Source: Chrysemys picta bellii (taxonomy: Eukaryota). From it: 64,000 bases of DNA. Position 1 is the stretch's first letter. Each line of letters starts with the position of its first letter. The stretch covers positions 30,442,001 to 30,506,000 of the forward strand of contig NC_088805.1 of NCBI RefSeq assembly GCF_011386835.1, given 5' to 3'. A model generated the notes under the pieces. The model had not been told where the DNA came from, ran no database searches, and saw only the letters and a list, made by a program, of their open reading frames with translations. Below are positions 29,267 through 62,725 of this stretch, in pieces. The translations under genes and the position numbers were made by a program.

Positions 29267-32200
29267 ATGATCGGCCAGAAGACGCTGCACTCGTTCTTCC
29301 GCGCGGCGCCGCCGCCGAGGAAGCGGGAGCGCTCCCCGGAGCAGGGCGGGGATGCTGAGGTACGGAGGGGCCGGGCGGGACCCGGGGGCAATGCGGCCAT
29401 GCTCGGCGGCCAGCGCTTAGCAGAGCTTATTTAAAAGACCCGCCGATGAATGCGGCGCCGCTTTGGGGGATTGACCAATAGGAGCGCGCTCCTTGACCCA
29501 CGGTCCAATGGGAGGGCAGAGCTGGGAGAGGGGTGGGGCCAGACAACTTGGCGGGACTTCGGTAGTCACTGGCCAGTAGGGAGCGGGTTTCCATTCTCAG
29601 CGTCCAATCGGAGGGGTGGGACTGGGCGGGGTCGATACCGCGGCGAGCTCAGTCGGCGGCTCTTCATAGCGAGGGGCCAATAAGGGGAGCGGTGGCCTTG
29701 CCCTTGGCCAATGAGGAACGAGGGCGAGTGCCACGCGCGCTTTCCGTGGCTGAACATCCAATAGGAAGGGCGCTCCCCTGGGGGAAACACGCGCGGTTTT
29801 CCCGCGAAGTAGCCACGTGTTTGCGCGGCGCAGGGAGCAGTTGTCACTTAGCCCCTCCCAGGCTGGGGGGCGGGAGCCCCAAGCGCTCCGGCCACAGCCG
29901 CTCGCCTGCGGTACCCCGGGGGGGAGCAGTCCTGCCCGGCTCGCCCCGCTCCACCATGGGGCTCGCCTGCCCCTTGTTTCTCCGCGCGGGGCCGGGCCGC
30001 TGCGTGCTGCCCCCTCCCAGTAGCCGTCTCTTGTGTCGCGACCTCCAGGCCAACTTCCCCAAAAAGCTGAAGCTGGTGGAAGATGATTCGGGGAAGGCCT
30101 CGCCCCGCTCCCCTCCGCTGAGCCCCGAGCAGCAGGAGCGGATCCGCAAGAACAAGGAGGCGGCTCTGCAGAGACTCGCGTCGCGAAGCGTCCCCGCGGG
30201 GTTCGGAGAGGGCTGGAGGCGGCAGCTGGCGGGGGAGTTCACTAAGCCCTACTTCTCCCAGGTGAGTGAGCGCAGGAGGCTTTGCCCGGGGGAGGAGCGT
30301 CCCGCAGCAGCAGCTCGTCTGTAGCTGCTCCGTGCCTGCCCCTCTCCCTCGCCTGTACTGACCGCGCACCCCCTGCTTCCTCTAGCTAATGGCATTTGTA
30401 GCAGACGAGCGAAAACGTCACACCATCTACCCACCCCCGCAGCAAGTCTTCACCTGGACGCAGATGTGCGACATCAGAGATGTAAGTGCCCCTGGGGCGA
30501 CCCCTGCAGTGCCGGGGCGAGAGTCGGGATTTGCTGCTTTCGGATGTTTTTGATAAAAAGATGAAAGCTGTATTTGCAATCAGGCTCCAGAATGCCATGC
30601 ATGTGTTGACTCTCATGGGTTTTCTGCCTGGAAACCCAGTGCTTTAGAATGTGAACCCTGCTTTGTCTCCTGTAGTGTTTGTGTACTTTGCCCCTGTTTT
30701 CTCATCCAGATACTGAAATAGGGATTTCTGCATTGGTTGTTTCCATCCATGACTGCAACATAATGCTCTTAAAAACGTTAGCTGTCTTCTTGGCCTTTTT
30801 TCCCCTCGCCCTCCCCATTTCGGCACTGCCTTCTTTCAGATGCAACTTGGCTGTGATCTACAAATTTTTACTTTGTAGCAATACATACAATTCTAGATAT
30901 TTTGAGATATTAAGAAATATTGTTGTGTTATCCGCACTAATTAGTGTCTGTGTTCAGGTAAAGGTTGTCATCTTGGGACAAGATCCTTATCATGGACCCA
31001 GTCAAGCTCATGGACTTTGCTTTAGTGTCCAGAGACCTGTTCCACCTCCACCTAGGTAGGGTTATGCTTTATCTGTTTAAAAGTCTGCCACTATTTACTG
31101 GGTAGGTTATATATAGGCATACAGCTGTTTGTGGGTTTGCCTTTCTGACTGCCTTTGAGGTAATTGTTTTGTGATTTGCTGAAAAATTAATTTTATAACA
31201 TATGACAGAGTATTTCTACTTGTTGGGGAGCAGAAAGATGTCAGAAGAATGACTCGTATTGAATTTTAAGGTGTATACTTTCTGGAAAAGATCACCTTGA
31301 TCAGTGGGTCTATTAGTCCTCACAGAGAGCGCGCTGATCACAACACGTCATTCGTGTTCTAGCCAGTCCTTCAGCCACCCACTGACCAGGCTGTCAGTGG
31401 CACCAGACACTCAATTGGCATAGCGCACCGCAACCCAGGACTGCTGAGCGATCCACCAGCCTCAGCCGCCCAAGTAGCTGGGATTACAGGCGCACGCCAG
31501 CACACCCAGAGCCTTCTGGGAAAGAATTACTACAAAAATAAATTGGTGAATTCTACACAGACTTCTGGCTCCTCCAAGGTGGTGATGTATTCCCAAGTAT
31601 TTAGGGTCCAAACCTACAAAATTGGGTTTCCATGCAGATCGAATTGTAGTATCAGGGCCTTACACAGGGATGACCTGCAGCCTGATGGCACAGAAGAGCC
31701 ATTCTTGTCTTGGTTTCACAGAGGTCTTTATTTTCTAAATTGGATTGGATTAAACTTGCTTGTCTTCCTGTATTGCATACAGACACCATTCTGTGGCTCT
31801 ATTCACTCAGGCATCCATCCTGCAAATCCTTAAGCAGATGCTTAACTTCAAGGAGATGTGTGGTCCCATTGCCTTCAGTAAGCATTTGCATAAAAGGCAG
31901 CAGTATCAGGGACGTGGTATTAATTAAAAAGATAGGTAAAGAAAAGGACCTGTCATATACATCAGATAAATCAGATGACTATAATTTTCCTAAATGGGAG
32001 TTGGATGACACATCTAGAATGCGAGATTAGATTTTTAGTTCTTGGTAAAAGTTCCAATTGTAATATACAAAATCATTAACTTGTCTCTTTGATAATTGCA
32101 CAGAAATATTCTAAAAATCTCTTCCATTATTTTTGTTTGCAGTTTAGAAAATATTTACAAAGAGCTGTCTGCAGACATAGAAGATTTCACCCATCCCGGT

Positions 32201-34844
32201 CATGGAGATCTAACTGGGTGGGCCAAGCAAGGTAATCAATCTGTTCATCCTTCCTGGGTTCTTCATTTAGACCGTGTCTGTACTAGCTCTTATGTTGGCA
32301 AAACTTTTGTCGCTCTGAGTGGCATAAGTATTGCCAGCATAAGCGCTCGTGTGCACAGCGTTATGTCTGTGGGAGATGCTCTCCTGCTGACATAGCTACT
32401 GTTGCTCATTGAGCTGGTTTTATTATTTCGAAGGGAGAGCTCTCTTCTATCAGTACAGCTGTGCCACTGTAAGCTTTTCAGTGTAGACATGGCCTAAGTG
32501 GGGATTTTCCTCCTCAGTGAGTGGGTTGTAGTAGCAATGTTAATCTAGCTATTGGTACTTTCCAAACTACGTGGCTGAGATTTATTAAAAGGAACCATTT
32601 AAACCCCCCCAGCCTTTTAATGTTCATAAAGTGGTTAAATAATACTGAGTCGAAGCATGTAAAAAGTGAGCCTGTGCTTATGCACAGCTTAACCACGTCA
32701 GCCTTGACCTTATACATACACAATTGTCTTCATGTTCTCCCGACAAAGCACGTGTGCAATGTGCTGGCCTTTTTAACAAAGAAGAGTTCACAATTTTTCT
32801 TGAGGTGTATTCTCTCTAATGATTCTTGCAAAAATCCACTCGCCTGGGGGAATAGCTTTTTGATGGGTGAGTGAAATAGCATCCTTTTTATTTATTTATT
32901 TTCTTTTTCTTTTTAAATAATGGTAAAATGTCTGAGAAAATATTATGCTTGGCTGCAGGTCGGAAAACCTTTGTGATAGCTGTGTAAAACTGATGACCAC
33001 TCCCCAACAAGCATACAGCTTAATTGTAATGAATGATTATGCGATGTCATTACTGAAAATCTCATGAAGGTCTCAGAGTTCATCTCTAACTTCCGTGGAG
33101 TTGCCTAGGGAGGTTGTGGAATCTCCGTCATTGGAGATTTTTAAGAGCAGGTTGGACAAACATCTGTCAGGGATGGTCTAGATCGGGGTGGGCAACGTTT
33201 GGCATGCGGCTCGCCAGGGTAAGCACCCTAGCGGGCCGGGCCAGTTTATTTACCTGCTGACGCGGCAGGTTCGGCTGATCGCGGCCCCCACTGGCCGCGG
33301 TTCGCCGTCCCGGGCCATTGGGTGCGGCAGGAAGCAGCGCAGGCGAGGGATGTGCTGGCCGCGGCTTCCCGCTGCCCCCATTGGCCCAGGACGGTGAACC
33401 ACGGCCAGGGGGGCTGCGATCGGCCGAACCTGCCGCGTCAGCAGGTAAATAAACTGGTCCGGTCCGCTAAGGTGCTTACCCTGGTGAACCGCGTGCCAAA
33501 CGTAGCCGACCCCTGGTCTAGATAATACTTAATCCTGCCATAAGTGCAGAGGACTGGACTAGATAACCTCTTGAGGACCCTTCTAGTCTTATGATTCTCG
33601 TGTTAATGATACTGACTCAGCATTATAGTGGTAAATCTGTTTATGCGGACATGCTGTAACTTTAAAGGAAAACTCCATTAAAGCCTATTAATTTACAGAA
33701 ATTATACTTAGCCCCTATATTTATCCCCTAAATGGGTCTATTTCTTAGATGGGTTTCTTAATGACATTTTCTCCCTACTTTGACAAATGGATTGTTTGAA
33801 AACTCTGTACTGGTATCTCTCATGGATAGTTTTCCCATGAACAAAAGCTTAAATGATTTTTTTACCATTACAGATCCAGCAAAAGACTGGAAGAGAACTT
33901 ACTACTTTGCAAACTAATTCATGTTTTCTCTGTCCACATTGATATGTACATGTCTTGTTTGTGATTAGGAGTACTTTTGCTCAATGCTGTCCTCACAGTC
34001 CGAGCACACCAACCTAATTCCCACAAGGAAAAAGGCTGGGAACAATTCACTGATGCAGTGGTGTCATGGCTAAACAATAATTTGGATGGACTTGTCTTCA
34101 TATTGTGGGGAGCTTATGCACAGAAGAAAGGCATCTCTATTGACAGGGTATGGTTTAATTTTTCATATTTCTAGAAGTCTCAATGCTTCTTGCTTCACTT
34201 GGGACATTTTTGGTAGGATGCCATCCAGAGGGGGCTTTTGGTCATAAGTGGAAAAAATGGTTGCTGCTGCCTACTATTCTATAAAAAAAGCTAGTAGACA
34301 GTTAAGGGACTCAAGGAAAGTTGTGCCTGTCCACTTCTGTCACCTCTTTTTGTTCCAAGAGTGCTTATCCTCTAGGAACAAGAACAATCAATGTGGAAGA
34401 AATTAAGATACTGTTGTGTGAAGAGGCTCAACATTATGATGTGTAGTTTATCTCCTGCAGGAAACTTCCCAGAACAACTTAAACTCTTTGTTGTTGCTGT
34501 TTATTAGAAATGCAGCCATTTGTTGAGTGCAGAAAGCCTGGGCTTCATGGCAAACCTATGTGCTCTTGTTTTTAACTCGAACGACGAAGAGATACTTGCA
34601 ATTTCATTTCTGCATTTGATAATAGCACAGATGAGCAACTTCCATCTAGGATCTGAAAACCTGCCAAGTTTCTCATTCTTTTGTTATCTCCAACTTCTTA
34701 CAGAAACGTCACCATATTCTACAGACTGTCCACCCCTCGCCTCTCTCTGTGCACAGAGGGTTTTTTGGTTGTCGGCATTTCTCTAAAACCAATGAACTGC
34801 TGAAGAAGTCTGGCAAGAAGCCCATTGACTGGAGAGCACTCTGA
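29267..34844 (+). CDS. UNG: Uracil-DNA glycosylase, nuclear isoform UNG2, 302 aa
   Basis: join(29267..29359,30049..30261,30386..30481,30958..31055,32143..32231,33969..34147,34704..34844) = 909 nt. PIP-box [11 protein letters not shown]; RPA-binding-like [13 protein letters not shown]; catalytic GQDPYH; leucine loop HPSPLS; ends KKPIDWRAL*. Confidence 0.97.
29460..29955 (+). promoter_or_regulatory. UNG: UNG internal promoter (PB-like) for UNG1
   Basis: Six same-strand CCAAT boxes (29475, 29505, 29604, 29677, 29708, 29758), E2F-like TTGGCGGG (~29548) and TTTCCCGC (~29788), GC boxes. Confidence 0.75.
29956..34844 (+). CDS. UNG: Uracil-DNA glycosylase, mitochondrial isoform UNG1, 302 aa
   Basis: ATG in perfect Kozak CCACCATGG; 31-aa Arg-rich leader with almost no acidic residues, [31 protein letters not shown], reads in frame into the shared part at 30049 (internal acceptor CTCCAG|GCC); exon 1B is 29956..30261, then the same exons as UNG2. 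Confidence 0.92.
31292..31513 (-). mobile_element. 7SL-RNA-derived retroposon (SINE-like or chimeric retrocopy) in UNG intron 3
   Basis: Reverse complement of 31404-31512 aligns to the 5' ~110 nt of 7SL RNA (ctgggtgtgctggcgtgcgcctgtaatcccagctacttgggcggctgaggctggtggatcgct-cagcagtcctgggttgcggtgcgctatgccaattgagtgtctg); candidate TSD ttctggaaaaga / ttctgggaaaga (31280-31291 / 31514-31525). Confidence 0.8.
32270..32494. mobile_element. PIF/Harbinger-type MITE in UNG intron 4
   Basis: Ends gaccgtgtctgtacta...cagtgtagacatggcc, flanked by tta/taa. Confidence 0.75.
33101..33598 (+). mobile_element. CR1 LINE 3' fragment with nested hAT MITE
   Basis: ttgcctagggaggttgtggaatctccgtcattggag...gggatggtctagat[MITE]aatacttaatcctgcc...cttatgattct. 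Confidence 0.9.
33184..33515. mobile_element. hAT MITE nested in CR1
   Basis: TIR-like cggggtgggcaac...gtagccgacccctg; perfect TSD gtctagat (33176-33183 / 33516-33523); interior related to the MITE at 11085. Confidence 0.92.
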
Positions 34845-37599
34845 GCTGCAAAGATGAATTTGGGAGTGTATTCTGAAGTAGCCCTTATATCAAGGATCAT
34901 CCCATTCCTGAAAAATTGGGCTGCATGAGAATTATTCTTTAGACTTGGTCTGGCTGAAAAACAAAATGGCCTACTTTGCAGAAGTGCTACCTTTAAGTAT
35001 CTTTTTTACATACTGTATATGTTTAAGGGGAAAACCAGAGTTTGATAAAAAGAATAATGAAACTTCTAGGTTGTCAGATTTTTTTAAGCTGAAATCTGTT
35101 GAGCCTGTTCTCAAACCAAAAACCACGTATGTTCTTTGCTCTAATGGGACTATATAGGGAATTCTCATATTGAGCTAAACTCATAAAAATTTCAGTTCGT
35201 GAGCATCCTTTTACGGTTAGTGAAACACATCTTATTTGCTATTTCCCCCCCGTATTTTCCCATGTGTAAACCTAGATTTTGTGTTTGGGTAAAATGGAAG
35301 CACCTTTATACTCTTACAGCAAAAAAGCTAGTTACTGTTTGTTCTGCTAAAGATCTGTTTAACCCATTTTCATTTTCCAGATGTCGATGTATTTGTGCTT
35401 TAAAGATGGTTTTCTATCAGGCAGCTGGACTAGGTGTGTGGTCTTACTGAACATGCCTTTGAACTCCCTGAGGATTTCAGGGCTAATATCCCAGACAATT
35501 GGGGGAAGTTATGCTAATATTTGTGATGGTTTCTCTTTTTTATATGCAAAGTACTTTATTGTGAGTTTAATACTATCAAAGTTCCATTGGGCATAACCGC
35601 TCCTTCTAACTACCACAACAGCCTGACTTTCAGAAAAAGTGTTCTCATGTTGTTTAGTATGTGTCTTTTGTCACCTGCATATGTACCTGCTGATGACAGC
35701 TGAACTTCAAGGTGATCCTTCAGGATGGTATTAGAACCTTTCATGTCACTCTTCAACATGTTTGAATGTACAGTAAAATCAGGACACCTCAGATATAGAA
35801 TTGGTTCTGTGCATTTCATAGTTATGAATTAACATAATTGTCTTCATTTCACTTTTTTGAACCTCCTCTCATCCAGTGTGTATCTTTCTCCCACAGTTTT
35901 ACTTCCACTCAGAGCTAGTCTGAAGTTGGAGATGCCTAGCATCTCTAAAGTTACATCCCCTGAAGAGTTAAATCTGTTCTTTAGCATGTCACAGGGGGCA
36001 ACAATCTTGTTCATAGTCACCATTTAGCATCTGGTTACATTGTGCAAACCTATTTCTCGTGCCATACTGATCCAGCAATATTTACTCAGTTAAAACTCCC
36101 ATTGAAAACAATAGACGTTTTGCCTGAATAAGATCTACAGGAGTTGGGTCATCTAGTTCAAAGTGGATTATTGCCATTTCTTTTTTTATTTTTTATTTTC
36201 AGTATGTTGCAAACTGCAGTATGGAAGTGACAGATCCTTTTATCCATGAACATTTTGCTCACTGTTTGCCACTGTGGTGGCTGGCTCCAATAGAAATTGA
36301 AGATCTCATGCTGCTCCCACAAAGTAGGTGACAGAACTCCCCCTGATGTCAGTGGGAGCAAGGTGGGACCTTGATGAAATTCTAGGATTTCAGCTCTAGC
36401 TCTGAATTAATTGATACTTTTCTATTAACTTTCACTGATAAGAGAAAAAGTTTAGTTTATCCCTTCTGTGAAATTGCATCCTTATTTTGTACTATACTAG
36501 TACATTTTACACTAGTATCTATGTATGGAGAAGCCATTTCTGAATCTTTGTCCCAGTAGGTAACACTAGTACAAAAGAAAAGGTTCTATATGTTTTCTGT
36601 ATATATTGTTTAACCATGGTGTTGGTTTTTAAATAAAAATTCTACTTTCTTTATGCTGTTGTGCTGGAATCATTTACTTAGCTCCCCATGTTAAGTTCCT
36701 CTTATCATAAATGTTTTCTCTTAGAAGTGTGCTGTAGACTGTTTTCCAAAAAAATATTGATATTAAACATAGTAATCTTTGAACTTGAACTCTTACTTCC
36801 AATTCTCCATCCTGCTTTGTTTTCACAGACCTATTTTTTCCCTCAAAACATTTTGGTACGTCTCAATTCTGCAATTCAAATGAAAATAAAACCTAGTGGG
36901 TAACCTCATCCAAATCTTTCTATTGTAAGAGTCAAATAGAGCATATCACTTTCTGAGAGTGTTTTCTCAGCGGGCATACTATACCATTTTTTTTTAAACC
37001 CACCTGTATGAAATATACCCATTACCTACAGTGGCAGCCTTGCACAGACAATTATCACTTGTTTCCTTCTGCAGAACGTTTTACATGTGCAAGTTTTCCA
37101 CCTTCCACTAAACTGGGCCGCCATAGTATACTTCAGTAATTAGTCCATAGGCAACATTCTGTGCTGCCCCAATGGAGAATATTAGACCACATGACTTGGC
37201 TCCTGCCCTTAATGCTGGTGTAGGGAATTTTGATGGGCGTTTGTAAAATTCCAGTGGAAATATTTCCAGTGTTTTTTATACTCTATTTTGGATGGAATTT
37301 CCAGCAGCTTCATGCTGGGTGGAGGGAGGGCTTGAAGGAGGCAGAGAGTTAGTTACTCTGCAAATGGGATATTGTGTCAAACACAGACTTTGCCTTGCAA
37401 TGCTGCAGGTTTGTATTTCCTTTTATAGAGCGCTTCGAGACGCCAGGATGAAAGCTGTGAGCATATCGGAGTAACGTGGGCTCAAAACTAAATGCAGAAA
37501 GACGTTGACGCACGGGTCTAGACTTGTGTTTACACCTCCCTGACAGCAGTTTTGTCTGAACTGCCTGGCCCTGTCCTGGCATAACGGGGGAGCAGCAGG

Positions 37600-42726: not shown

Positions 42727-43598
42727 CTAGATTCATAGATTCATAGATTATAGGACTGGAAGGGACCTCGAGAGGTCATCGAGTCCAGTCCCCTGCCCGC
42801 ATGGCAGGACCAAATACTGTCTAGACCATCCCTGATAGACATTTATCTAACCTACTCTTAAATATCTCCAGAGACAGAGATTCCACAACCTCCCTAGGCA
42901 ATTTGTTCCAGTGTTTAACCACCCTGACAGTTAGGAACTTTTTCCTAATGTCCAACCTAGACCTCCCTTGCTGCAGTTTAAACCCATTGTTTCTGGTTCT
43001 ATCCTTAGAGGCTAAGGTGAACAAGTTTTCTCCCTCCTCCTTATGACACCCTTTTAGATACCTGTAAACTGCTATCATGTCCCCTCTCAGTCTTCTCTTT
43101 TCCAAACTAAACAAACCCAATTCTTTCAGCCTTCCTTCATAGGTCATGTTCTCAAGACCTTTAATCATTCTTGTTGCTCTTCTTTGGACCCTTTCCAATT
43201 TCTCCACATCTTTTTTAAAATGCGGCGCCCAGAACTGGACACAATACTCCAGCTGAGGCCTAACCAGAGCAGAGTAGAGCAGAAGAATGACTTCTCGTGT
43301 CTTGCTCACAACACACCTGTTAATAATCCCAAAATCATGTTTGCTTTTTTTGCAACAGCATCACACTGTTGACTCATATTTAGCTTGTGGTCCACTATAA
43401 CCCCTAGATCCCTTTCTGCCGTACTCCTTCCTAGACAGTCTTTTCCCATTCTGTATGTGTGAAATTGATTTTTCCTTCCTAAGTGGAGCACTAACAAAGA
43501 CAAATGCAAAGTGCTCCACTTAGGAAGGAAAAATCAATTTCACACATACAGAATGGGAAAAGACTGTCTAGGAAGGAGTACGGCAGAAAGGGACCTAG
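42727..43598 (-). mobile_element. Young 5'-truncated CR1 LINE with inverted-duplicated 5' end
   Basis: (catagatt)n tail at 42727; uninterrupted ORF2 C-terminal frame 42821..43309 ([39 protein letters not shown]); 43493-43598 is the same element in opposite orientation. Confidence 0.96.
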
Positions 43599-50928: not shown

Positions 50929-51146
50929 TAACTGCTTTTCAGAAAAGTGAATATTCAGTTTACCTCCTCCCCTTCCATCCCAGCCTGAATCCTTGGCATG
51001 TGAGATTTGTAGCGGAGGGAATTGTAATAAATAAATGTTGTTGGCATGAAACTCGCTTGTCCGTATGTCTTGTGCACACAGTTGTCTGTGTCTGCATGCA
51101 GATGGGCTAGACCTATGATAAGGTTTTGTATCTTGGTGGGTGTTTC

Positions 51147-51293
51147 CAGGGCCGGCTCTAGGTTTTTTGCTGCCCCAAGCAACAACAACAAAAAAAGCCC
51201 TCCAGGAGCACAACTGCTGAAGCAAAAAAAAAGGGTGGCCAGAGTGCCGCTTCTGAAATTGTGCTTGGTTTGCTGGTGCCTAGAGCCGGACCA
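51147..51293. mobile_element. hAT MITE (CAGGGCCGGCTC family), degenerate
   Basis: cagggccggctctagg...cctagagccggacc; related to the copy at 4750, opposite orientation. Confidence 0.7.
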
Positions 51294-52626
51294 CAATCCT
51301 ATGGGAGGCTGGTGCTTGCATTCTGTGCCTGGGTAGAGCAATCAGGCTGAGGACTTTACAAATGAGATGGAAATTGACTGAAGCAGTGGTGCACTTATAA
51401 GGATGCCTGGGTCCTTGCCATTTTTCAAATTGACTTTAAAAAAAAAATCTACTTCTGGTAGACACATACTCTTTATATAATATAACCTGGATTTTTCTTT
51501 TAAGTTACGATCTCTTCCCTGATGTTTATAAGGATCTTTTCAGCTAAGAGGAAACTGACATTGCAGGGAAAATTGACTTTGCACAATATTCTGTCAAGTA
51601 CACAAAATGAACAAGCTTAAAAAAACCTAGAGGGAAATAATTTTTCTGCTAACGTCTTTCAGTTCCAGTGTTCTTGGATGGTGCTAGTGACCAGAAGGCG
51701 CCCAGTTTTTAGGGAGAAATGTGATTTTATATTTTTCCCATCCAAGATGACGGTGTCCCTTTCTAAATGTGGCTACACCAAAGTCCTTGTAGATGGACTT
51801 TCATAATAGCCCAAAACTGGGGGTGTTGGCTTAGGATTTAATGTCAAAGTGAATGCACATCTGCTACTTCCATAAGTCACGTAAACTTATTAGACTGTCA
51901 CGTTTCTGTGGGAAAAAGCCAGGGTGTTGACTTGTATTAGCCTATTAGGCATATCTAGGGGAAGCTCAGTGCATAGTACCAGTCAGCTCTTGCCAAAGTT
52001 CTGTTTTTAGGAAGTAAAAATAGCTTGTGCCGTAACAGTGTCTTCAGTTTAGCTATTGCCTGTAAGTACATTGCAGTGCTGAATGAAGGACCAAGCAAAG
52101 AGATTTGTCAGAAGGATTTTGTTGGGTAAAAGATAAAGTAGCTGGCTGCTTTCGGTACTAAATGTTCTTTGGTGTTAGAAATATACCTGAAGATCTCTTA
52201 ACCAGCATTATGCTTCTGTTGTTTATTTTTCACAGGATCTGTGTGGGCGGGAGTGGGGGGATAGGAGGGAGGTCTGTAAGGTCTGGCTGCTGGCGGCTGC
52301 CTTTCGTTCTGTTAATCTAACATACACCACTAACAAACAGCTAATAGAGAATCGTGGTTTTGGAGCAAGGGGGATCTGATTCCTAATCCTTATTGCTGTA
52401 ATACAGTTCCTAGTGCTCTGGGACGATACATACTGGTCGTCTTGACATCTGCTGTGACCACAGAAGTTTTATGGTGTTGTTTTGATCCTGTGGTAGCATT
52501 TCAAATCCAACCAGTCTTTCTCTGTTAGAATGAGTCAGTCCCAGTCCACTTGCTGCCTGTTAGTGTTAACTGAACTAGATCGTGACTTTTATACATATGC
52601 ATCTCTTCATCTTTTAGGGTTTCTGA

Positions 52627-52677
52627 ATGTTACTGCTGGCCCTGTTGTCCTGTCTGATTTTGCTATGGTTTATTTAG
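52627..52677 (+). other. ACACB: ACC2 hydrophobic leader (MLLLALLSCLILLWFI) ended by an in-frame TAG
   Basis: ATG 52627, 16 codons, TAG 52675-52677, then ACC AAA ATG(52684) in the same frame; resembles the human ACC2 N-terminus MVLLLCLSCLIF...KIWGKM. Confidence 0.88.
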
Positions 52678-52683
52678 ACCAAA

Positions 52684-55600
52684 ATGGCAAATTCTCAGCC
52701 CGTTAACCAGCTAAAGTCAGAGACTGAGAGACCTAGTCCTGAGCCGCCAGCAGCCTCTGAAAACAAAGAGAAACCTTCAAAAGGATCAACATGCCAACTG
52801 CAGGAGAGGGCTGTAACACCACCCCAGTCCACAGGGCCTGGCCACACTTCACTGACCTCTGGACAAGTGTCCATGGATGCCTTTCAGCAAGCAGCAAGTA
52901 TGCTTTGGCAACACAAACTTCCAAATATCCCTTCTTCCTCTGACGTGTCAGAGCCGGCACAAGATGTTCCAGCAAACAGTTTAGCAGAGCCTTTATCTCA
53001 AGTTCCGCTTCCTTCATCAAAGCAGCAGATGAAGCTAAAGAAGTCCATCTCCAAGGAAAAGCAGGAGCAGTTTATAGAACGCACTCAGGTACAGCTCAAA
53101 AGGCAAGCGATGGCAAAATTTGTCCTGGGCTCTTTTGAAGATAACTCGTCTGATGATGAGCTGGTACCTGGATCCTTTAAAGTCACTAGCAGAAGTAGCG
53201 TGATGAGCGTTGGTTCCTCCTCCTCTTTTGAGTCCTTTTCACTAACGTCTTCTTCCACAACCATGAGGTAAAGAGCCCTGAGATTTGTTTCCAGTTTCTT
53301 TTGCTCAAAGCTATTTATAAATAAGTGAGGGGGAATGTAAGAAGTAGGAGTCAGTATATAAAATTTAAAATTACCCCCTAAATCCCACCCCACTCCCGGT
53401 TTACTGAAAATTGCTCTTTTTCTTCTAATGAAATTCTGTTTTTAAATGGAAACTTTTTATTTTCCGTTGACAAGATTGGGGTGCTGGAGTTTGAGCAGAA
53501 CCTTGCTAATCCCCACTTCGCTGGTCTGTGCATTTTAGAATTTTGCCCCCAAACACCAGGCAGTCTCTGCCCACATCTTAGCTAGGGTTTAAAAGCAGAG
53601 CCAGCGCTGCTAAATCTAAACCTGAGCTATGCTTCGCAGCAGCTCGTACGCTATGCTTTGCGGAATTGGGGCTTCACTCAATAATTTGCAATTGTCAGTG
53701 CTTCCCAATAGTTGTCCTGGTCACTAGTGCAGATTTGCAAGGTTATGCTGACTTCAAGAGGCTATTTATGTATATTACAGCATTGCAATGTCCAACTTGC
53801 TGGTGCATTAAATCTATTACTAAGTGGACTGGGCAGCTGGGGGATTAATAATGGAATATGGAACTGCAGAGTGTAGTCTGCCCAAATTATCCCCTTCATG
53901 ATAAGCTGGGGTTTTGAGGGGGCTTTCAGGTGAGTTTGGAGGAGTATTTAATACCCCTGTTTGAATTAGAAATGGGCCTGGATCAGGATCCTTGATCTAA
54001 AGAGCTCCCTAGCTGTGATCCTGATGCACATACCCCTCTACCTCGATATAACACTGTCCTTGGGAGCCAAAAAATCTTACCGTGTTATAGGTGAAACCGC
54101 GTTATATCGAACTTGTTTTGATCCACCAGAGTGCGCAGCCCTGCCCCCCGGAACACTGCTTTACCACGTTATATCCGAATTCGTGTTCTATGGGGTCCCG
54201 TTATATCGGGGTAGAGGTGTATCCATCTCTACTTTGACCTAAATGCCACCATGCACAGTATGTGGTTGATTTGGTTTCAAAATGGATATCCAATAATAAA
54301 CTCAGTGCAGCTGTTTGAGGTGGTGTATCCCCAAGAACTGTGTTCAGTGTCTGTGCAGAGAGCTTTCTCCAGAACAGTGCCATAACAGTTCTGAAAGCGC
54401 CTGGTTCGTGCTCCAACAGTGCCACAGCCAAGCAGCTACACTTCACCAGTGTCAGCCTGCTCTTGCCAATGAGCACCTTTGTGACTTTTGTCTGAGGAGA
54501 GATTAGAGAGTTGAAGCTTGGATGCAGCAACTAGAGAGGTCATCCTAGTTCTTGCTCTTACATGACAAGAGGAAAAGATTTCAGCTGAATTGAGGAACTT
54601 AAAATGAGAGAAATAATATAAGGTGTATTTTAACCCTTGGACTGTGATGAGGGATGTGATTGATAAATCAGCTTGACCCTGAGTTGCCCTGCCAACCTTT
54701 GTAGTTTTACAGTTGTGTGTGTGTGTGTGTGTGTGTGTGCTCCCTGACTATGCAAAGGAGAGAGAGAAAGTGACTATACACAAAGTGCTGTCAAAAGCAC
54801 AAAGGAAACATTGCAAAAAATAGATTTTTTTTCTTCTCCTAATCTCTTTCCAAGGTTGTTATAACAGATATTAATTGTAACTGTTTAAAAATATCAGATG
54901 GAAATGTGCTTTTTTTTTTTTTTTTTGGTCCATTGGATGCGCCCCTTTAAACATAGTAACTCAAGTTAAAATCAGACCACTTTTTTCTCCCCTGCTTTCT
55001 CTTTCATTTTGTTTTTTCCTTGTATGCTTGTTGTGTTTTTGTTTTTTCCCCTCTTCAAGCACGCCATCTTTTGGTCTGTGCAAATGTTGCTACCTTGTCA
55101 CTGCCAATAGTCTCCACATGGGCCAAAAATCTGCCCTCAGTTACCCTCATTAATGTCTTTGCATGGAGGTAACTAAGGGCAGAATTTTTCTCACTGGTGG
55201 GAGGATAAGACCATATTTAATACAGGGGATCATCATCATGTATGTTACACTTACCTTAGAGTTTATATCTGTATGGTGCAAAGCAACAGAGAGTGCTGTG
55301 GCACCTTATAGACTAACAGATGTATTGGAGCATAAGCTTTCATGAGTGAATGCCCACTTCATCAGACGCATATCTATCTGTATGGTGTATTTTTGTTTTG
55401 CTCAGTAACGACAGTTTTATTTGGCTGACCTATGGGCATGATTTTCAGACACCTTAAGCACACAGAATGAGTGCACAGTTAATTACAACTGCTTGTGCTT
55501 GCATATGTAATGCCGACAGACCCCGGTCATCAGCGGGCAGGATCGAACCTGGGATCTCTGGAGCTTAGTGGATGATCCTCTACCACATGAGCTAAAAGCC

Positions 55601-58600
55601 AAATGGCTTTTAGGTAAGGCTGTAGAGCAGACTCATTTAACTCTCTCTAAGTGGTCTCCGTGCCACTAGATGGGACAGAACACCACACCCAGAAGGTGTG
55701 TGGATTACACATGCACAAATGTGGCTAGTTAGCCAATTGCCCCTGCAGTGCCTAACTTTTTTTTTTAGATTGGTATACAGTTGTGTTAATTGCTTTGTGC
55801 CTATGTTATCTGAAAGTCTAGTCCCAACTGAGCATTATGGAATTTTAAGGAACTATTTTCAATAATTATTCTAAATAAATTCGCAATGCACTGTCGGGGG
55901 TCGGAGACCTTTACACTTTCTTAGCAGAATCACTTAGGGAGATCTGGGCAGGATTAATTTAAACTCTTTTGCCCTTCTAAACCCTAGTAGAAATACAGCC
56001 TTGTACTGTGCAACTTAACCGTGTTATTCCCTGTTTTTGGACTACACCAAAAGTAATACTTAATTCAGAAATTTCCAACATTATTTGACTGTCTCTGTTT
56101 TGGGCTGGGGAGAGGGACGTTACTCAGACACTAATGAGTAAAATGAAGGCCACCTGTCAGCACTGTTGCTTCGTTTTTTCACTTTGTAAACGTGTGGGTT
56201 CTGAGTGTGTTGAAATGGCTACTGGCTGTTAATAAATGAAGTGTATCCCTTTAAGGAATAGCAATAAGGTGACCTGGGCTGAGCTAGCCTTGAAGCAAAG
56301 GGCTGTTTTCCTTGCATCTTGGATCAGCAGATTATAGCGGTTGTGTGGGGTTTGCTTGCTCTTTAGCTGCTGAATTGTTTTACTTGGTGTCCTTTAGAGG
56401 TAAGCGAGCTTTTAAAACTCTAAATGATAACAATATGCAGATGTGAGCATTCGTGAACTGCGTGTGACCCAAAAGTGGGAGCATGCGCCTTAAGTGATCA
56501 CACTGTTTGACTGTTTGGTGAAACTTGGGGTCTGATCCTGTGAGGTGCTGAGCACCCTCCGTTCCTGTTGACTCCAAGAACTGCAGCACCTTGCCGGGTC
56601 ATGTGCTTAAAAAAAGAAGTCACTGCTAGGAAAGGAGTCATTCAGGTTAGGCTGTTATTTCACCTGTGTGTCAAGGTGAGGGTCTGGGATCCCAAAATGT
56701 TACTTTTGTGTGTGATCTTTGGTGACAGGCTGTGTTCCTCACTCTTATCCATGGAGATGGCCAGGCAGAATTTTACCTGCTGCTACCACTGCTTGGAGAA
56801 ACAATCGCTATCCTTCCTTCGTCAGCAAAGGAAGGAGAGTGGAAGAATCATAAAGCAGAATGAAAATGTTTATATTTACAAATGTGGGAGAAGGTGTGTG
56901 AGGCCTGGTGGCTGGGCCAGGGAGCTGGAATTCCTAGGATCTATTCCCAGCTTTGTCGCCAGCTGCCTGTGATGACCTTGGGCAGGTTCACTTCATCTTC
57001 CTGTACCTCCATTTCTGATGATGCAGATCTAAGTTGCAGGCAGGGTTATGAGGATGAGTGAAATGGTGTTAGTAAATTATCCTGCGATCTGGAGAGAAAA
57101 AGTGCTGGTGTTAATGGAATCAAATCCACAGCTCTCCCTTCGACAAAACACTCAAGAGCAAGAGCTGCAGATTTGGCCCTGATCTGTTACATATTAATTA
57201 ATAACTTATGTTTCTAAAGAGCCTCTCGCTGAGGCATTTGAGGTGCTGAGTGAATGGATGGAACGTGAGACAATTAAAACAGCTTACAAACTAGACGGTG
57301 CTGCCGTTATTGCAGTAATGCGCAGATTATGTGCTTGGAACAAAGTGCCCTCGTTTTAAAAAAGAGGGGTCTTGCCTGGGGTTTGGTCTTAACATTTTGG
57401 GTTGCCTATTGCTAAAAAGTGAGATTGATTAAGCTGTGTGGAGAGGCGGAGGGGGTGGGGGCAGGGGAAGGAGGGGGTGGGATCCATACCCTTGTGGCCG
57501 CTAGAGCAAAAGCTCACCCACCTTACGTGTAAAGAGGGAAGTCACATGCAGTGGCGTTACCAGAGTGCTGATCCTCCCCAGGCACCTTGCCAGGGAGCTC
57601 TTTGGAAGCCAGCAGGACTGATGCTGTCTCTACGGTATCCTTTATCAGCCCTGATGCTCCACCATTAACTTCAGTGGGTGCAGGATCCAGGCCCCAGGGC
57701 ATGCAGGATGGGTGCAACGTGCTCACGGCTGCTTGCAATAGCATTTGTTCCTCTTCCACGGCCTGAGAACAAAGACATGGGTAGGAATAACTTCCCCTGT
57801 CATCCTGTGAAGGGATCATTCATTAAACCCCTTCCCAGTGCTGAGCATCCAGCGTTTCAGCCATAAAACAATGACTCAGATAGACCTATTTGTATTCATT
57901 TACCAGGAAGGGGAACTTGCCCTTCAGATAAGGCACTTTGCTGTGTCAGTGCTTCTCAGTTTCTAGGGCTGGGCTTGCTGTGAAGTGGGATCTGGAGTCA
58001 GACATGGACTCCTGCGAGGTGTTTGATTGGGGTTTGGACCCAGAGTGACAGTTCAGGCCCCGCTCTGCTCATTGCATTTGTTCTTGCTCTGCATGTAAGT
58101 TGTCATTGACATGAGCTGGCGCCCTGCTCTGGTATGAGCCCGTTATACATAGCGCTGTGATAAGGCTGATAGGAATAGATTGCAGCATGAAACAAAAATA
58201 AAATCCAATCTTTCAAATCCCTATTCTAACCCACTTCTGGAAGAACTTAACCAACGTTTCATGGCTAAGCTGGACAGAGGTCTTCATTTGTTTATGTAAT
58301 TATAACGTTCACTAAAAGGTAGCAAATGACTTTGTCCATAAAATCATATGGACTTGATTCTCTTTCTCCCCTGCCCTTTGCATGTTGTCCGTTGTCTTGG
58401 TCTGTAAGCTCTTCAGAGCGGAGACCATGGCTCACTTTGTTCATGCACCACATTGGAAACACCTGCTTTGATACAAGTTTGTCAGTCCAACCCAGTCAGG
58501 AAATGCAAATGTTCAGGCTCCAGGTCAAGGTGATGTCTCTGCCTTTCACATACGCTGTGTAGTAAGGGTAGAGTTGGGTTCCTCCCCCCTACTCCCACCC

Positions 58601-61600
58601 CATCCCTACTTGGATTTTGCGAAACAAAACTCTGGCCCCTGTAGGTATCTGGTAAGGTGAAACTGCTCTAAGCTACTGTTGCTTTAAGAGAGAAGTGAGT
58701 GGAGCCAGCCCAAGGTCATTTAAGTGAAGTTTCTAATCTGTGCCACAGGGTGCTGCTAAAGAGTTCGCTGTTACTACTACTCTAGCTGCCAGGGGAAGGA
58801 GGAGAAATGGAGGCAGGGAAGAGAGACCGAGAAATGGAGGAGGAAGAGGAAGCACCCGGGTTGGACTCTGCAATGGGACCCTAATCACACATTGAATTAC
58901 AGAATGGAGGGAGAGGATGGGTCCAGTGTTTGAGAAGGTTGGCACCAGGGGCAAAAGAAATGTTCTGCCTTGGGTACCTTGAAAAGGGGATCAGGAGTTC
59001 AAGGCAGAATGTAACTTTCTTAACAGCTGCAACTTCGGTCTGCTTAGCAAAACAACAGGCGCCTGCTGCTCCTTTCTGATGTGCTTCAAGGGTTTTTCTT
59101 TACCAGTTTCCTAGTTCTGAGTATAGTTCCGGGTAGGAATCTCTGTTAGGGTGACCAGATGTCCCGATTTTATAGGGACAGTCCCGATTTTGGAGGCTTT
59201 TTCTTATATAGGCTCCTATTACCCCCCACCCCCTGTCCCGATCTTTTACAGTTGCTATCTGGTCACCCTAACTCTGTACTTGTTGAGATGTGTGCAGAGA
59301 AGCACTCCTTGAAAGTTAGTGGTAGCCAGGCATTGTTCCCTAAACATTGCCTGCATACTGCATTGGCTGTTTTTATTTTCTCATTGAAATGTGAAAGTTA
59401 ATGAATGTTTGTCCAGCGATTTGAATTTATCGAGCAATCCATGTATTTAGGGAGATTAAGGCAGCAGCTTTTCTTATGCAACTTTTTCTCTTTAGTTTTC
59501 TGAGTGTGGCAGTGAGTTATATCTGGGTTTTTTTTAGCACTGCACAATATTTTTGTGGCGTTTAACTTTTTTTTTTTTTAACTTTTGTGTTTGTGAGAGA
59601 TGCTGTCAGACTAAAAATAATTTATTTGAAAAACAAACCCAACTTCCCTGTATTACCCCTTCATTTATTAAAGCTAAAATCTTGTAAAACCAAACTTTTT
59701 TATAGTTTGTTTTCTTTGAATTTCAGGCATCTGGGACAATGAAAAATGAACTGGTTAGTTTCTCTTTAGCTACTGGGTTTCATCATGTTGTCCTGCTCTA
59801 GCATAGCACTGCATTGCTTGGGTTCTGCCCCCTGCAGGCTGGGGTTCATGTTGAAACAGTTCTTGCTGAAATATAAAAGTATTTTGTGGGTTTGGGAGAG
59901 GGAAGGGAATTTCTGTGCACATTAGCTTGATTGCTGTAAGAGTTAGCAACACGTTCATAACTTTATTGCAAATCTCATTATTTGGTTCTTTTCTTTACTC
60001 CAGGAGGTGGGACTTTATTTTCTCATGTGAGAATCTCTCTGATTTCATGATTGGGGGAAGGGCGGGGAGTACGTTTCTAGCCTTTAAGGTTGCAGAAAAA
60101 AACCTTACAAATATGAGCCCTGGATTCTCAAAATCCAGAAGGCAATTAAAAGAACCTAGAGTGTAGTATTTTAAAAAAATTGTAGCATTTGTAAGCCACT
60201 GTTATGACTTTTGAATGCTTGCGGTTGATACTGCTGGGATAAACACAATCTGAATATCTGGGCCTTAGCTATCTGCAAGTAGCCCTTTGATCATTAGCAT
60301 AAAGTACTAAAGGATTCCCATCCATGAAATTTACAGGAGACTGTTGTCTGAGCAGGATTAGCAAAGAAAGGGGTTCAGTCCTACAAAGCCTTTGCAAATG
60401 GACTTCTTGACTGGAGTTAAAGTGAGTACGAATTGCTCCTCTGAGTAAAGGTTCCGAGAGTGGAGAGGCAGCATTCTGCCCAATATTGCAGTATTTAGTG
60501 ACTGATAGGAAAATGAGAATGATACTGTCAGTGTGTTTTGATTTCCTGTTCAAAACTACATGCTTGTTTTTCTTTTGTGTCCTAAACACAAAGAGCATAA
60601 TTTATTTGATTGTTGCGTGCTGATTTCATGACTAGCAAATGCCCCGACCTTACAATCTGAGCTGCATGGGAAGAGCAGTGCTTAACTTCAAAGTGCCTCT
60701 CTGGCCCAGGAGGTCCTTTCATGCGTCTATGGAAAAAACAACAAAGTATGCAGCAGATTCGCAGGATGGTCTTGTAGATTGAGCATGGAACTGACAGCTG
60801 GTCCCAGTACTGCTGTTGATTTGCTGCATGTCTCTTGGGCAAGTCACATAGCATCTCTGTGCCAGAAGAAAGGTGTGCACTTAAAACACTGCAGCACTTC
60901 AGTGAAAATGCTCCTATGTTGACAGGAGAGTTTCTCTTGTTGGTGTAGTTAATCTACCTCCAGGAGCGGCAGTAGCTATGAGAGAAGCCCTGGATGTCTT
61001 ACACCAGTGGTTCTCAAATTTTTTTTTTTTTTTTTTCAATGGACCACTTGAAAATTGCTGAGGATCTCGGCGGACCACTTAATGATCTTTCCAAATGTTG
61101 TTTGTACCGTTAGCTAACTATGGTAAGGTGCTTTGGATAAAAGTGCTATATAAAAAACCCTTAATAATTAACGTTTTTTTGTTCTACAAATAGAAGCACA
61201 CAACTCATATTTTAATATCAGTAGTCTTACCTTTCTAATGCGATGGATGTGCCCTCTCTCCCCCGCCGCGGCAGCCCATGAGCCGAGGCTGGGAAGGACG
61301 GGGGGGATCTCTCCCCTGCCGCGGCAGCCCCCGAGCTGGGGAAAGTCGCCTCTTTCTCTGGCTGCCGCAGCCCCCTCTTCTCACCCCACTGCCCCCCCCC
61401 CGTACCCTCTATTTCCCCCAAGGCACCACCTCACTTTACATGTCCAGGCACCTAATTAGTGAAGCCATGGCTCCACTAATTAGGTGGGTGGCCCTTCATT
61501 CCCTCGTGTGTGACCGCCCAAGCGCGCACCTTAGAGGGAACTATCCGTGGACCACCTGAATGGAGCTCGCAGACCACTGGTGGTCCGCGGACCAAAGTTT

Positions 61601-62725
61601 GAGAACTGCTGTCTTACATCATGGCTTAGGTTGTTATAACTGTGTCACTCAGGGGGTGTGTGGTTTTTTCTCATCCTTGAGCAAAGTAGCTATACCCGTG
61701 TAAGTTTATCATGTAGGCCTCAGGACTCTTCTGTGACTTGGAGATAAGAAAGGCCTACCACATAGCAGTTGTGAGGCTTAATAACTGTTTGCAAAGTAAT
61801 TTGAGACCCTTGTGCAGAGCGTTGGCACGTTGCCAGCGATGTGTGATCTGTGAATCTTTGTCAGGCAGGAAGCGGATTAGTATTTGTCATGGCACTATCG
61901 TTATCCTGATAGTAGCTACACACATACTCAGCCTTGTCCGTCAACAGTCCTGAAATTTCCCAGTGATTTTGGCTGTGTGCGCGTCTGTGGTCTGAAATGC
62001 AAACACCAGGATGGCTCTCAGCCTCTCTTAGGGTATCTGTGTAGAGATAGAACATCTTTCCTAGCAGCACAATTGCCTTTTATCAATGGTTTTTAAATCA
62101 GTGACAGGTAGCCAAGGTCTTGGGCACTTGGCATCATTAAAGATATCCTGTTATTTTGCATAAGAGTAGGGGATTCAGCCCTGAAGAATTACATTTCGCT
62201 TTCCTAAATTTACTCTCCCATGTCTCTCAATTGAATACAGTGTTCTCCTTCACCCTTTGTGTAGGGTACTGTTTAAACAGCTTCTGTGTTCTGTCTTGGA
62301 AGAGTCTGCATATTGGTAAAGCAATCCTTTATATCCTGTATTTACCTTGTCGGGAGTGTACGGGTTATCTGATGGCTATTGATTCTTTGAGACCGTTGGT
62401 ATTACTGTGATGGTTTGTTTTTCATCTTAAGTTTTAGGCTGTTGCATGTTTTGCAAAATTCATTCCTTCTCAGAGTCCTAAGCTTGACATCAATCTGACT
62501 CTGCCCTTCTGAACTGTTGGCGTATCTAGACAGCAGCCTTGCTTTGATGATGATTTTTTTTTAAATGCCGTGTTTTTTTGTACTTGATTCAGGCCTAGCA
62601 TGTCAGGGCTGCACCTGGTCAAGAGAGGCCGAGAGCAGAAGAAGCTGGATCTCCAGAGGGATTTCACTGTCGCCTCACCTGCTGAGTTCGTGACTCGTTT
62701 TGGGGGGAACCGCATTATTGAAAAG
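52684..62725 (+). CDS. ACACB: Acetyl-CoA carboxylase 2, 5' part only (gene continues beyond the window)
   Basis: join(52684..53267,62593..62725); exon 2 acceptor at 52618. Contains [22 protein letters not shown] and TMR|[44 protein letters not shown], including the AMPK-site region RPSMSGL; GT-AG boundaries, phases match. Confidence 0.95.
54033..54219. mobile_element. Tc1/mariner (Tigger-like) MITE, same family as 12129
   Basis: TIRs cccctctacctcgata...tatcggggtagaggtg; TA flanks. Confidence 0.9.
54714..54738. repeat. (TG)n microsatellite
   Basis: Direct inspection; another (TG)n at ~19628-19647. Confidence 0.9.
55279..55374 (-). mobile_element. Penelope-like short insertion with complete hammerhead fold
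   Basis: 13-bp TSD tatctgtatggtg (55266-55278 / 55375-55387); minus strand 55369-55330 reads GCGU-CUGAUGA-A-GUGGG/cauuca/CUCAU-GAA-AGCU-U-AUGC. Confidence 0.88.
55506..55709. mobile_element. Solo-LTR-like element (TG...CA) containing a tRNA-like Pol III promoter module
   Basis: Ends tgtaat...attaca; 4-bp TSD cata/catg; minus-strand A-box TAGCTCATGTGG (55594-55583) and B-box GGTTCGATCC (55549-55540). Confidence 0.7.
59147..59270. mobile_element. hAT MITE (AGGGTGACCAG family)
   Basis: tagggtgaccagatgtcccg...ctggtcacccta; closely similar to 1849-1972; imperfect TSD around ctctgt. Confidence 0.9.
61005..61611. mobile_element. hAT-Charlie-like non-autonomous element
   Basis: TIRs cagtggttctcaaa...tttgagaactgctg; TSD tcttacac / tcttacat. 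Confidence 0.88.

What the first reader, a model, noticed from the sequence alone, without database searches (positions are those of the whole stretch)
52618..52690. In-frame stop codon cuts the mitochondrial anchor off ACC2 (ACACB)
Seen: ATG(52627) encodes MLLLALLSCLILLWFI, then TAG (52675-52677), then TK-M(52684)ANSQ... in the same frame, and the downstream ORF is intact. Established: mammalian ACC2 uses this hydrophobic N-terminus (human ...KIWGKM) to sit on the mitochondrial outer membrane, where its malonyl-CoA inhibits CPT1; the TAG falls where the Trp (TGG) is expected. Inference: a TGG>TAG change turns the anchor into a 16-aa uORF. The first ATG has weak context (tgaATGt) and the second a strong one (aaaATGG), so an unanchored cytosolic ACC2 would be made. 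The new AG also lies at the end of a T-rich tract (gtttatttag|acc) and could act as an acceptor that removes the leader. If fixed in the lineage, this would change control of fatty-acid oxidation. It may instead be a private allele or a single-base assembly error.
Basis: partly seen in the sequence, partly recalled or inferred. Interest (0 to 1): 0.85.

Follow-up and report, generated by a model that had tools for sequence, protein, structure and literature searches.

The report
Stop codon severs turtle ACC2 membrane anchor
In this turtle a single G-to-A change puts a stop codon between the membrane anchor of the fat-burning regulator ACC2 and the rest of the enzyme; it is in every animal checked and in the spliced mRNA, so the usual mitochondrion-tethered form can hardly be made.

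Summary
ATG 52627 opens MLLLALLSCLILLWFI, TAG lies at 52675-77, and ATG 52684 opens an intact 195-codon frame that runs to a GT donor.

- **Ancestral codon:** eight orthologous reptile/bird DNA loci all carry TGG at this codon. About 14 of 15 orthologous N-termini have Trp there.
- **Gene identity:** it is ACACB by homology and by ALKBH2-UNG-ACACB synteny. The genome is a turtle.
- **Not an error or private allele:** 31-mers spanning the TAG occur in 20 runs from 8 studies. Contigs from another conspecific and from a third labelled taxon also carry A at 52676.
- **Transcribed:** two RNA runs cover the exon about 40-80 times deeper than the introns. They are spliced at 52618 and 53267 and read TAG.
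- **Rejected claims:** the proposed new acceptor at 52678 is not seen. A-to-I correction is not visible.
- **Robust inference:** anchor and enzyme body cannot be joined in one protein.
- **Likely but untested:** a shortened, unanchored ACC2 starts at 52684. Yield is probably reduced, because an out-of-frame, strong-context ATG at 52665 overlaps that start.

The three taxa differ by only 0.3-0.4%, so how deep the change goes in turtles is unknown. This is a new variant of a known enzyme, of moderate interest.

The parts
52616..52617 (+). 3' splice acceptor AG of the first coding exon of ACACB
   Evidence: The motif 'ag|ggtttctgaATG' is conserved in 8 orthologous loci. RNA contigs of X8 and X36 begin or switch to non-genomic sequence at 52617.
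52618..53267 (+). First coding exon of ACACB (650 nt): 9-nt leader, anchor remnant, ACC2-specific N-terminal extension
   Evidence: RNA depth is 205 (X8) and 12.9 (X36) in the exon, against 0-5 in the flanking introns. The 881-nt X36 contig carries 202 nt before and 27 nt after the exon that do not lie on the flanking DNA.
52627..52677 (+). Remnant of the hydrophobic membrane anchor, now a 16-codon upstream ORF (MLLLALLSCLILLWFI + TAG)
   Evidence: It is homologous to the N-termini of P0001, P0002, P0004, P0005, P0007, P0019 and P0060.
52675..52677 (+). TAG stop in place of the conserved Trp codon TGG (G>A at 52676)
   Evidence: TGG is found in L001-L007 and L013. 31-mers carrying the TAG occur in 20 runs from 8 studies. 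No other letter is read at 52676 in X11, X9, X8 or X36.
52665..52706 (+). Out-of-frame ATG in strong context (tttgctATGg) with a 13-codon ORF ending TAA, overlapping the main ATG
   Evidence: It is expected to compete with initiation at 52684 by leaky scanning (inference).
52684..53267 (+). Intact reading frame from the conserved Met20-equivalent (accaaaATGg): the probable start of an anchorless ACC2
   Evidence: It matches ACC2 first-exon ORFs of other sauropsids at E down to 7e-43. It contains the conserved block [18 protein letters not shown].
53268..53273 (+). 5' splice donor GTAAAG
   Evidence: The X36 contig leaves the genome at 53268.
62593..62725 (+). Next coding exon (…[18 protein letters not shown]…FGGNRIIEK), intact, in phase with the first
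   Evidence: tblastn shows 89% identity to the skink ACC2 fragment P0005. The sequence and splice sites were read.

Best explanation
A G-to-A substitution at 52676 changed the conserved Trp17 codon of turtle ACACB (ACC2) to an amber stop. The allele is the one found in all sampled animals of three closely related labelled taxa. The exon is still transcribed and spliced at its normal sites.

The hydrophobic leader that tethers ACC2 to the mitochondrial outer membrane in mammals is therefore translated, if at all, as a free 16-residue peptide. It cannot be joined to the enzyme. This step follows directly from the sequence and the RNA contigs.

The enzyme body is most likely made from the conserved, strong-context Met codon 6 nt after the stop. 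There are two possible routes. One is reinitiation after the 16-codon upstream ORF. The other is leaky scanning past the weak first ATG. The product would be an ACC2 that keeps its roughly 195-residue N-terminal extension and its regulatory site but lacks the anchor. This step is inferred.

The stop is at codon 17, which lies inside the start-proximal zone where nonsense-mediated decay is inactive. That fits the presence of mature mRNA.

Yield is probably lower than ancestral, for two reasons. The spacer for reinitiation is only 6 nt. An out-of-frame strong ATG at 52665 also intercepts leaky scanners.
For: Sequence and frame.

Ancestral TGG and conserved exon architecture in 8 orthologous loci. 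Trp is conserved in about 14 of 15 N-termini.

Orthology: homology; the next exon intact; ALKBH2-UNG-ACACB synteny. The genome is a turtle.

Population evidence: every 31-mer of the 61-nt query spans 52676, and all 3 sampled words are held by 20 runs in 8 studies. Fifteen of those runs, from 14 samples in 6 studies, are not from a possible source sample. Two further WGS runs were chosen without knowledge of their state. X9 is the same label as the window but another study, and X11 is a third label. Both have single contigs of 2.3-2.8 kb across the site with no difference at 52676.

RNA evidence: X8 and X36 show exon-only depth, exact exon boundaries and TAG.

No other hydrophobic segment exists in the 195 residues; the maximum 19-residue hydropathy is 0.47.

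Start contexts.

Role of the ~20-residue hydrophobic leader in mitochondrial localisation: as summarised in PMC2629817.
Against: No protein, ribosome-profiling or localisation data exist.

All runs were Logan contigs, which drop minor variants. A minority TGG allele, partial RNA editing or a minor splice form cannot be excluded.

The 6-nt spacer and the overlapping out-of-frame ATG at 52665 argue that little protein may start at 52684.

The 202-nt upstream leader seen in the X36 contig could not be read, so further upstream ATGs are unknown.

Only about 11 kb of the gene is in the window, so intactness of the remaining exons is untested.

The three taxa differ by only 0.3-0.4%, so this may be a young, effectively neutral or mildly deleterious change in one species complex.
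Confidence: 0.6

Rival explanations
1. The long (anchor-type) ACC2 isoform is functionally lost in this turtle. Ribosomes are consumed by the 16-codon ORF and by the out-of-frame ORF starting at 52665. Little or no enzyme is made from this transcript. Any ACC2 activity would come from another promoter or first exon, as with mammalian ACC2.v2, or be dispensed with.
For: ATG 52665 has a strong context and its ORF overlaps the main ATG. Only 6 nt separate the stop from ATG 52684. An anchorless ACC2 isoform from an alternative first exon exists in human and rodents, with conservation reported in chicken (PMC2629817).
Against: The 195-codon frame after the stop is still fully open and its conserved block is intact. 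The mRNA is present and correctly spliced. No conserved alternative first exon was detected in the 9.3-kb intron by comparison with skink, gecko or a compact (bird-like) locus, though a 16-codon exon is easy to miss.
Confidence: 0.25
2. The stop is corrected or bypassed at the RNA or translation level, either by A-to-I editing of UAG to UIG (read as Trp) or by stop-codon readthrough. A useful amount of anchored ACC2 would then still be made.
For: UAG is the triplet preferred by ADAR enzymes, and amber-to-Trp editing is known from hepatitis delta virus (own knowledge). The anchor remnant has no second defect.
Against: Both RNA contigs read A at 52676 and no alternative contig is reported. The exon around the site folds no better than shuffled sequence (z = -1.27) and the TAG sits in a small loop, not a long duplex. 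TAG followed by A is not a known readthrough context (own knowledge).
Confidence: 0.04
3. The TAG is a common but not fixed allele. A TGG allele still segregates, so some animals make anchored ACC2.
For: The k-mer search lists only holders of the TAG words, and contigs collapse heterozygous sites. Runs X3-X5 of study P1 held the flanks but were not listed among holders, possibly only because of list caps.
Against: Every one of 16 non-source samples examined carries TAG, including the two chosen blind. No contig with G at 52676 was seen in four runs.
Confidence: 0.1
4. Assembly error or an allele private to the sequenced animal.
For: None beyond prior plausibility.
Against: Independent DNA and RNA runs from eight studies and three organism labels carry the TAG.
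Confidence: 0.01

Closest known systems
Canonical vertebrate ACC2 (ACACB), long isoform with N-terminal hydrophobic leader
   Same: It is the orthologous gene, in the same position after ALKBH2 and UNG. The exon structure is the same: the acceptor lies 9 nt before ATG1. The leader is homologous (turtle MLLLALLSCL… versus human MVLLLCLSCL… encoded by the cloning primer in PMC2629817). It has the same N-terminal extension, and the following exon is conserved.
   Different: A stop codon replaces the conserved Trp at the end of the leader, so leader and enzyme are in separate reading frames of translation.
Human/rodent ACC2.v2 isoform (Castle et al. 2009, PMC2629817)
   Same: It is an ACC2 without the hydrophobic leader. 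That isoform was shown to be enzymatically active and is expected not to be membrane-bound.
   Different: ACC2.v2 arises from an alternative first exon and replaces all 218 N-terminal residues with 16 new ones. It coexists with the anchored form. Here the loss is genomic, keeps the ~195-residue extension, and leaves no route to the anchored form.
Start-proximal nonsense variants rescued by downstream reinitiation and exempt from NMD (beta-globin, LMNA; PMC12776119)
   Same: The stop is within the first ~21 codons, an in-frame AUG lies just downstream, and the mRNA persists.
   Different: Those are disease or engineered alleles. This one is the prevailing allele of a wild species, and it removes a targeting signal rather than part of a globular domain.

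Membership tests
ACACB / ACC2 orthologue | ACC2-specific N-terminal extension with hydrophobic leader, encoded by the first coding exon | tested here: met
   P0001 aligns over residues 1-204, E=5e-63. Hits go to first-exon ORFs that continue into Biotin_carb_N/CPSase_L_D2 domains in skink P0005 and gecko P0060.
ACACB / ACC2 orthologue | Conserved synteny next to UNG and ALKBH2 | tested here: met
   The ALKBH2 first exon is at 26031-26366 (-) and the UNG exons at 29267-34841 (+). UNG also lies just upstream of the ACC2 exon in L014. The human gene order is from my own knowledge.
ACACB / ACC2 orthologue | Regulatory serine motif and start of the biotin carboxylase domain in the following exon | tested here: met
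   Exon 62593-62725 encodes [13 protein letters not shown]…FGGNRIIEK, 89% identical to P0005.
ACACB / ACC2 orthologue | Complete BC, BCCP and CT catalytic domains | not testable with these tools
   The rest of the gene lies outside the window.
Membrane-anchored (mitochondrial outer membrane) ACC2 | Hydrophobic N-terminal segment covalently continuous with the enzyme | tested here: not met
   TAG at 52675-77 lies in DNA of three taxa and in spliced mRNA. No other hydrophobic segment occurs in the following 195 residues.
Upstream ORF (uORF) controlling a main ORF | AUG and in-frame stop inside the mature transcript, upstream of the main AUG | tested here: met
   ATG 52627 to TAG 52677 lies within the spliced exon.
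Upstream ORF (uORF) controlling a main ORF | Translation of the uORF and an effect on main-ORF output | not testable with these tools
   This needs ribosome profiling or reporter assays.
Start-proximal NMD-exempt nonsense codon | Stop within about 21-23 codons of the start, and the mRNA not depleted | tested here: inconclusive
   The position (codon 17) fits. Mature spliced mRNA is present. Contig depth cannot measure depletion.

The most novel reading that the evidence does not exclude
The stop is fixed in an anoxia- and cold-tolerant turtle lineage. An abundant, active but untethered ACC2 is made from Met 52684. This lineage would then control CPT1 and fatty-acid oxidation without a mitochondrion-bound malonyl-CoA source. 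That would be a natural, possibly adaptive, knockout of ACC2 anchoring, and would test whether tethering matters at all.
Probability: 0.12. Interest if true: 0.75.

Novelty: new variant of a known kind. Interest (0 to 1): 0.5.

Why it matters
The idea that ACC2 regulates fat burning because it sits on mitochondria next to CPT1 rests on mammalian localisation experiments. A wild vertebrate whose only ACACB allele cannot join the anchor to the enzyme is a ready-made natural experiment.

If an active cytosolic ACC2 is made, tethering is dispensable, or is compensated, in a whole animal. If none is made, the long isoform is dispensable. Either result bears on how malonyl-CoA pools are compartmentalised and on ACC2-selective drug concepts.

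The case also shows, outside human genetics, a start-proximal nonsense codon turning a targeting signal into a uORF. No paper linking ACACB and turtles in this way was found.

Tried and rejected
- **Other turtles, by protein search.** Neither search of the 195-residue ORF returned any turtle orthologue. The exhaustive representative search found no relative above 57% identity. The indexed search found none above 55%. The indexed search's length filter also excludes full-length ACC2.
- **Other turtles, via the skink fragment.** The third search, using region 1-215 of P0005, returned only a skink and a gecko.
- **Reaching the exon from the UNG side.** This is impossible with 10-kb flanks, because UNG ends at 34841, 17.8 kb upstream.
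- **Metagenome motif scan.** A scan for a TGG/TAG-tolerant motif gave five chance microbial matches, for example peptidase-like genes.
- **New acceptor at 52678.** No joint or contig break is reported there in the two RNA runs.
- **A-to-I editing.** It is not seen in the contigs, and no duplex is predicted around the site.
- **Second copy of the exon in the window.** None was found.
- **Apparent parallel cases.** Gekko kuhli P0003 and Logan protein P0016 start at the Met20-equivalent, but their DNA has intact anchors with TGG. These are gene-calling artefacts.
- **ACC2.v2-type alternative first exon in the 53268-62592 intron.** No conserved block was found against skink, gecko or a compact bird-like locus. 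The test is weak for so short an exon.
- **Literature.** Abu-Elheiga et al. 2000 could not be opened. A search for ACC2 with 'leaky scanning' found nothing.
Full report
**What is in the sequence**

- A polypyrimidine tract and AG (52616-17) precede the exon, which starts GGTTTCTGA.
- ATG 52627 opens MLLLALLSCLILLWFI.
- TAG occupies 52675-77. ACC AAA follow. ATG 52684 then opens MANSQ… for 195 codons.
- The exon ends at 53267 and the donor is GTAAAG at 53268-73. The TAA that closes the mechanical ORF is therefore intronic.
- The next coding exon (62593-62725, [13 protein letters not shown]…NRIIEK) is intact and in phase.

**What gene and what organism**

An exhaustive HMMER search with the 195-residue ORF found 14 relatives. 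These are first-exon ORFs such as P0001, P0002, P0004 and P0007, plus a 614-residue skink fragment (P0005, Lerista edwardsae). P0005 continues into the biotin carboxylase domains.

Upstream in the window lie ALKBH2 (minus strand, 26031-26366) and UNG (plus strand, 29267-34841). They sit head to head at a CpG island. This is the human gene order, from my own knowledge. UNG is also the immediate upstream neighbour of the ACC2 exon in another sauropsid contig. The gene is ACACB.

The best named matches of the UNG exon are turtles: Chelonoidis abingdonii 91%, Chelydra 81% and Chelonia 81%. Other notes of this scan also call the genome a turtle. The run history shows a 2012-13 genome project, later resequencing, and a species label beside a second label. 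This makes me suspect a painted-turtle-type emydid. That is a guess, not a result.

**The stop replaces a conserved tryptophan**

I fetched the DNA of eight orthologous loci. They are a gecko, a skink, a probable crocodilian-grade relative (L002, 71% DNA identity including intron), a compact bird-like locus and four others. All keep the same architecture: ag|GGNTTCTGA-ATG, a hydrophobic run, TGG, (A/G)CC, AA(A/G), ATG. All have TGG where the window has TAG.

Among 15 orthologous N-termini, 14 have Trp at this place. The change is therefore a derived G>A at 52676.

Two proteins appeared to start at the second Met (Gekko kuhli P0003 and Logan P0016). Both have intact anchors in their DNA, so they are gene-calling artefacts and not parallel losses.

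**Is it real and how widespread**

A 61-nt query centred on 52676 was used, so every 31-mer contains the site. All three sampled words are held by 20 runs from 8 studies. Fifteen of these runs, from 14 samples in 6 studies and all labelled organism A, are not from a possible source sample.

I then laid four runs on 51000-55000.
- **X9** has the same label as the source but comes from another study. A 2348-nt contig shows 7 substitutions and 1 indel, none at 52676.
- **X11** carries a third label. A 2801-nt contig shows 11 substitutions and 1 indel, none at 52676.

Assembly error and private allele are excluded.

There are limits. These are Logan contigs, which collapse heterozygous sites, and the k-mer search lists only holders. 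'Fixed' is therefore not proven. The three labels differ by only 0.3-0.4%, which is one species complex. I could not obtain this exon from any other turtle. The depth of the change within turtles is the main open question.

**Transcription and splicing**

X8 and X36 behave as RNA.
- Depth in the exon is 205 (X8) and 12.9 (X36). In the flanking introns it is 0-5.
- X8's 624-nt contig starts at 52617.
- X36's 881-nt contig matches 52617-53268 with no difference. It carries 202 further letters before and 27 after that do not lie on the adjacent DNA. This is a spliced mRNA using the ancestral acceptor and donor.
- Both contigs read A at 52676 and run unbroken across 52678.

The proposed new acceptor is therefore not supported. 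Wholesale A-to-I correction of UAG to Trp is not seen either. The local RNA fold is unremarkable (z = -1.27), with the TAG in a small loop. Minor forms cannot be excluded from contigs.

**How it most likely works**

*Shown:* no ribosome can translate leader and enzyme as one chain. An in-frame TGA directly before ATG1 also excludes an N-terminal extension from the upstream exon.

*Inferred:* the enzyme starts at ATG 52684. Three points support this.
- Its context (A at -3, G at +4) is strong. The Met and its strong context are conserved in 8 of 9 sauropsid loci, whereas ATG1 always has T at -3. In the turtle ATG1 also has T at +4.
- The resulting protein has no hydrophobic segment. The maximum 19-residue hydropathy is 0.47, against about 2.1-2.4 for orthologous leaders. 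It should therefore be soluble.
- A stop at codon 17 lies in the start-proximal zone where NMD is inactive, about 21-23 codons in HBB and LMNA (PMC12776119). This agrees with the presence of mature mRNA.

Two features argue for reduced yield.
- Only 6 nt separate the stop from the next AUG, which is poor for reinitiation by established scanning rules.
- An out-of-frame ATG at 52665 in strong context opens a 13-codon ORF that overlaps ATG 52684. It would capture most ribosomes that leak past ATG1.

The chief rival is therefore that the long isoform is effectively lost.

**Comparison with what is known**

The ~20-residue hydrophobic leader is the proposed mitochondrial localisation signal of mammalian ACC2, as summarised in PMC2629817. 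I could not open the primary paper.

Anchorless ACC2 is not unprecedented. Human and rodent ACC2.v2 uses an alternative first exon, lacks the first 218 residues, is active, and coexists with the anchored form.

The turtle differs in three ways. The loss is genomic, it keeps the N-terminal extension, and it leaves no route to the anchored form. I found no conserved ACC2.v2-type exon in the turtle intron, but that test is weak.

No paper connects ACACB with such a change in turtles.

**Verdict**

- The nonsense change is real, widespread and transcribed.
- The splice-acceptor idea is rejected.
- The cytosolic-ACC2 outcome is plausible but untested, and is complicated by ATG 52665.

This is a new variant of a known enzyme. 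Interest is moderate. It would rise if the stop proves old within turtles and the truncated enzyme is abundant.

Noticed in passing
window 52665-52706: An out-of-frame ATG in strong Kozak context opens a 13-codon ORF that overlaps the presumed main start at 52684. It is harmless when ATG1 is used for the full protein, but it becomes a trap once the anchor is a uORF.
   Followed up: partly
window 52627/52684; L001-L007, L013: In all nine sauropsid loci the first ATG has T at -3. The in-frame Met about 19 codons later has A/G at -3, and G at +4 in 8 of 9. This hints that dual initiation (anchored plus free ACC2) could be ancestral.
   Followed up: partly
window 26031-26366 (-) and 29267-34841 (+): The ALKBH2 first coding exon and the UNG exons (both alternative N-terminal exons included) lie head to head at a CpG island at about 28-30 kb. 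This is the same order as in human.
   Followed up: partly
window ~51134-51290 and ~54030-54222: A very high-copy short repeat, SINE-like. Summed contig depth is 10^5-10^6 against about 24-33 for single-copy DNA in the two WGS runs.
   Followed up: no
window 51945-52193: A non-coding block about 450-650 nt upstream of the exon aligns at 71% with L002:4359-4596. Run X8 has some RNA contigs in 52072-52205. It could be an enhancer, an alternative leader exon or a low-copy repeat.
   Followed up: no
window 36557-36663: Short matches to L014:4339-4472, weak at E=0.07. They lie between the UNG end and the ACC2 coding exon, inside a CpG-richer stretch (36-38 kb). This is a candidate region for the ACACB promoter or non-coding exon 1, whose 202 nt are seen only as loose sequence in the X36 contig.
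   Followed up: no
window 42821-43309 (-): A 162-codon ORF resembling the C-terminal part of a CR1-type LINE reverse transcriptase, in ACACB intron 1.
   Followed up: no
window 52581, 53356, 53366, 53473: At 53356, 53366 and 53473 the window differs from X9 and X11, and also from a low-depth (2.6) X8 contig. At 52581 it differs from X9 and X11 only. The assembled animal therefore carries the minority alleles there. Within the exon only two differences were seen: 52822 C>T (Pro>Ser) in X11, and 53241 A>G (synonymous) in X9.
   Followed up: partly
L001 (Gekko kuhli, GCA_051903775.1) 2947-3005; L013 66-125: Deposited or called proteins start at the second Met although the anchor is intact upstream. 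ACC2 is also split into several gene models in the gecko record.
   Followed up: yes
window 61227-61559: A GC-rich patch about 1 kb upstream of the second coding exon. It is a possible site for an ACC2.v2-like alternative promoter. No conservation was detected.
   Followed up: partly
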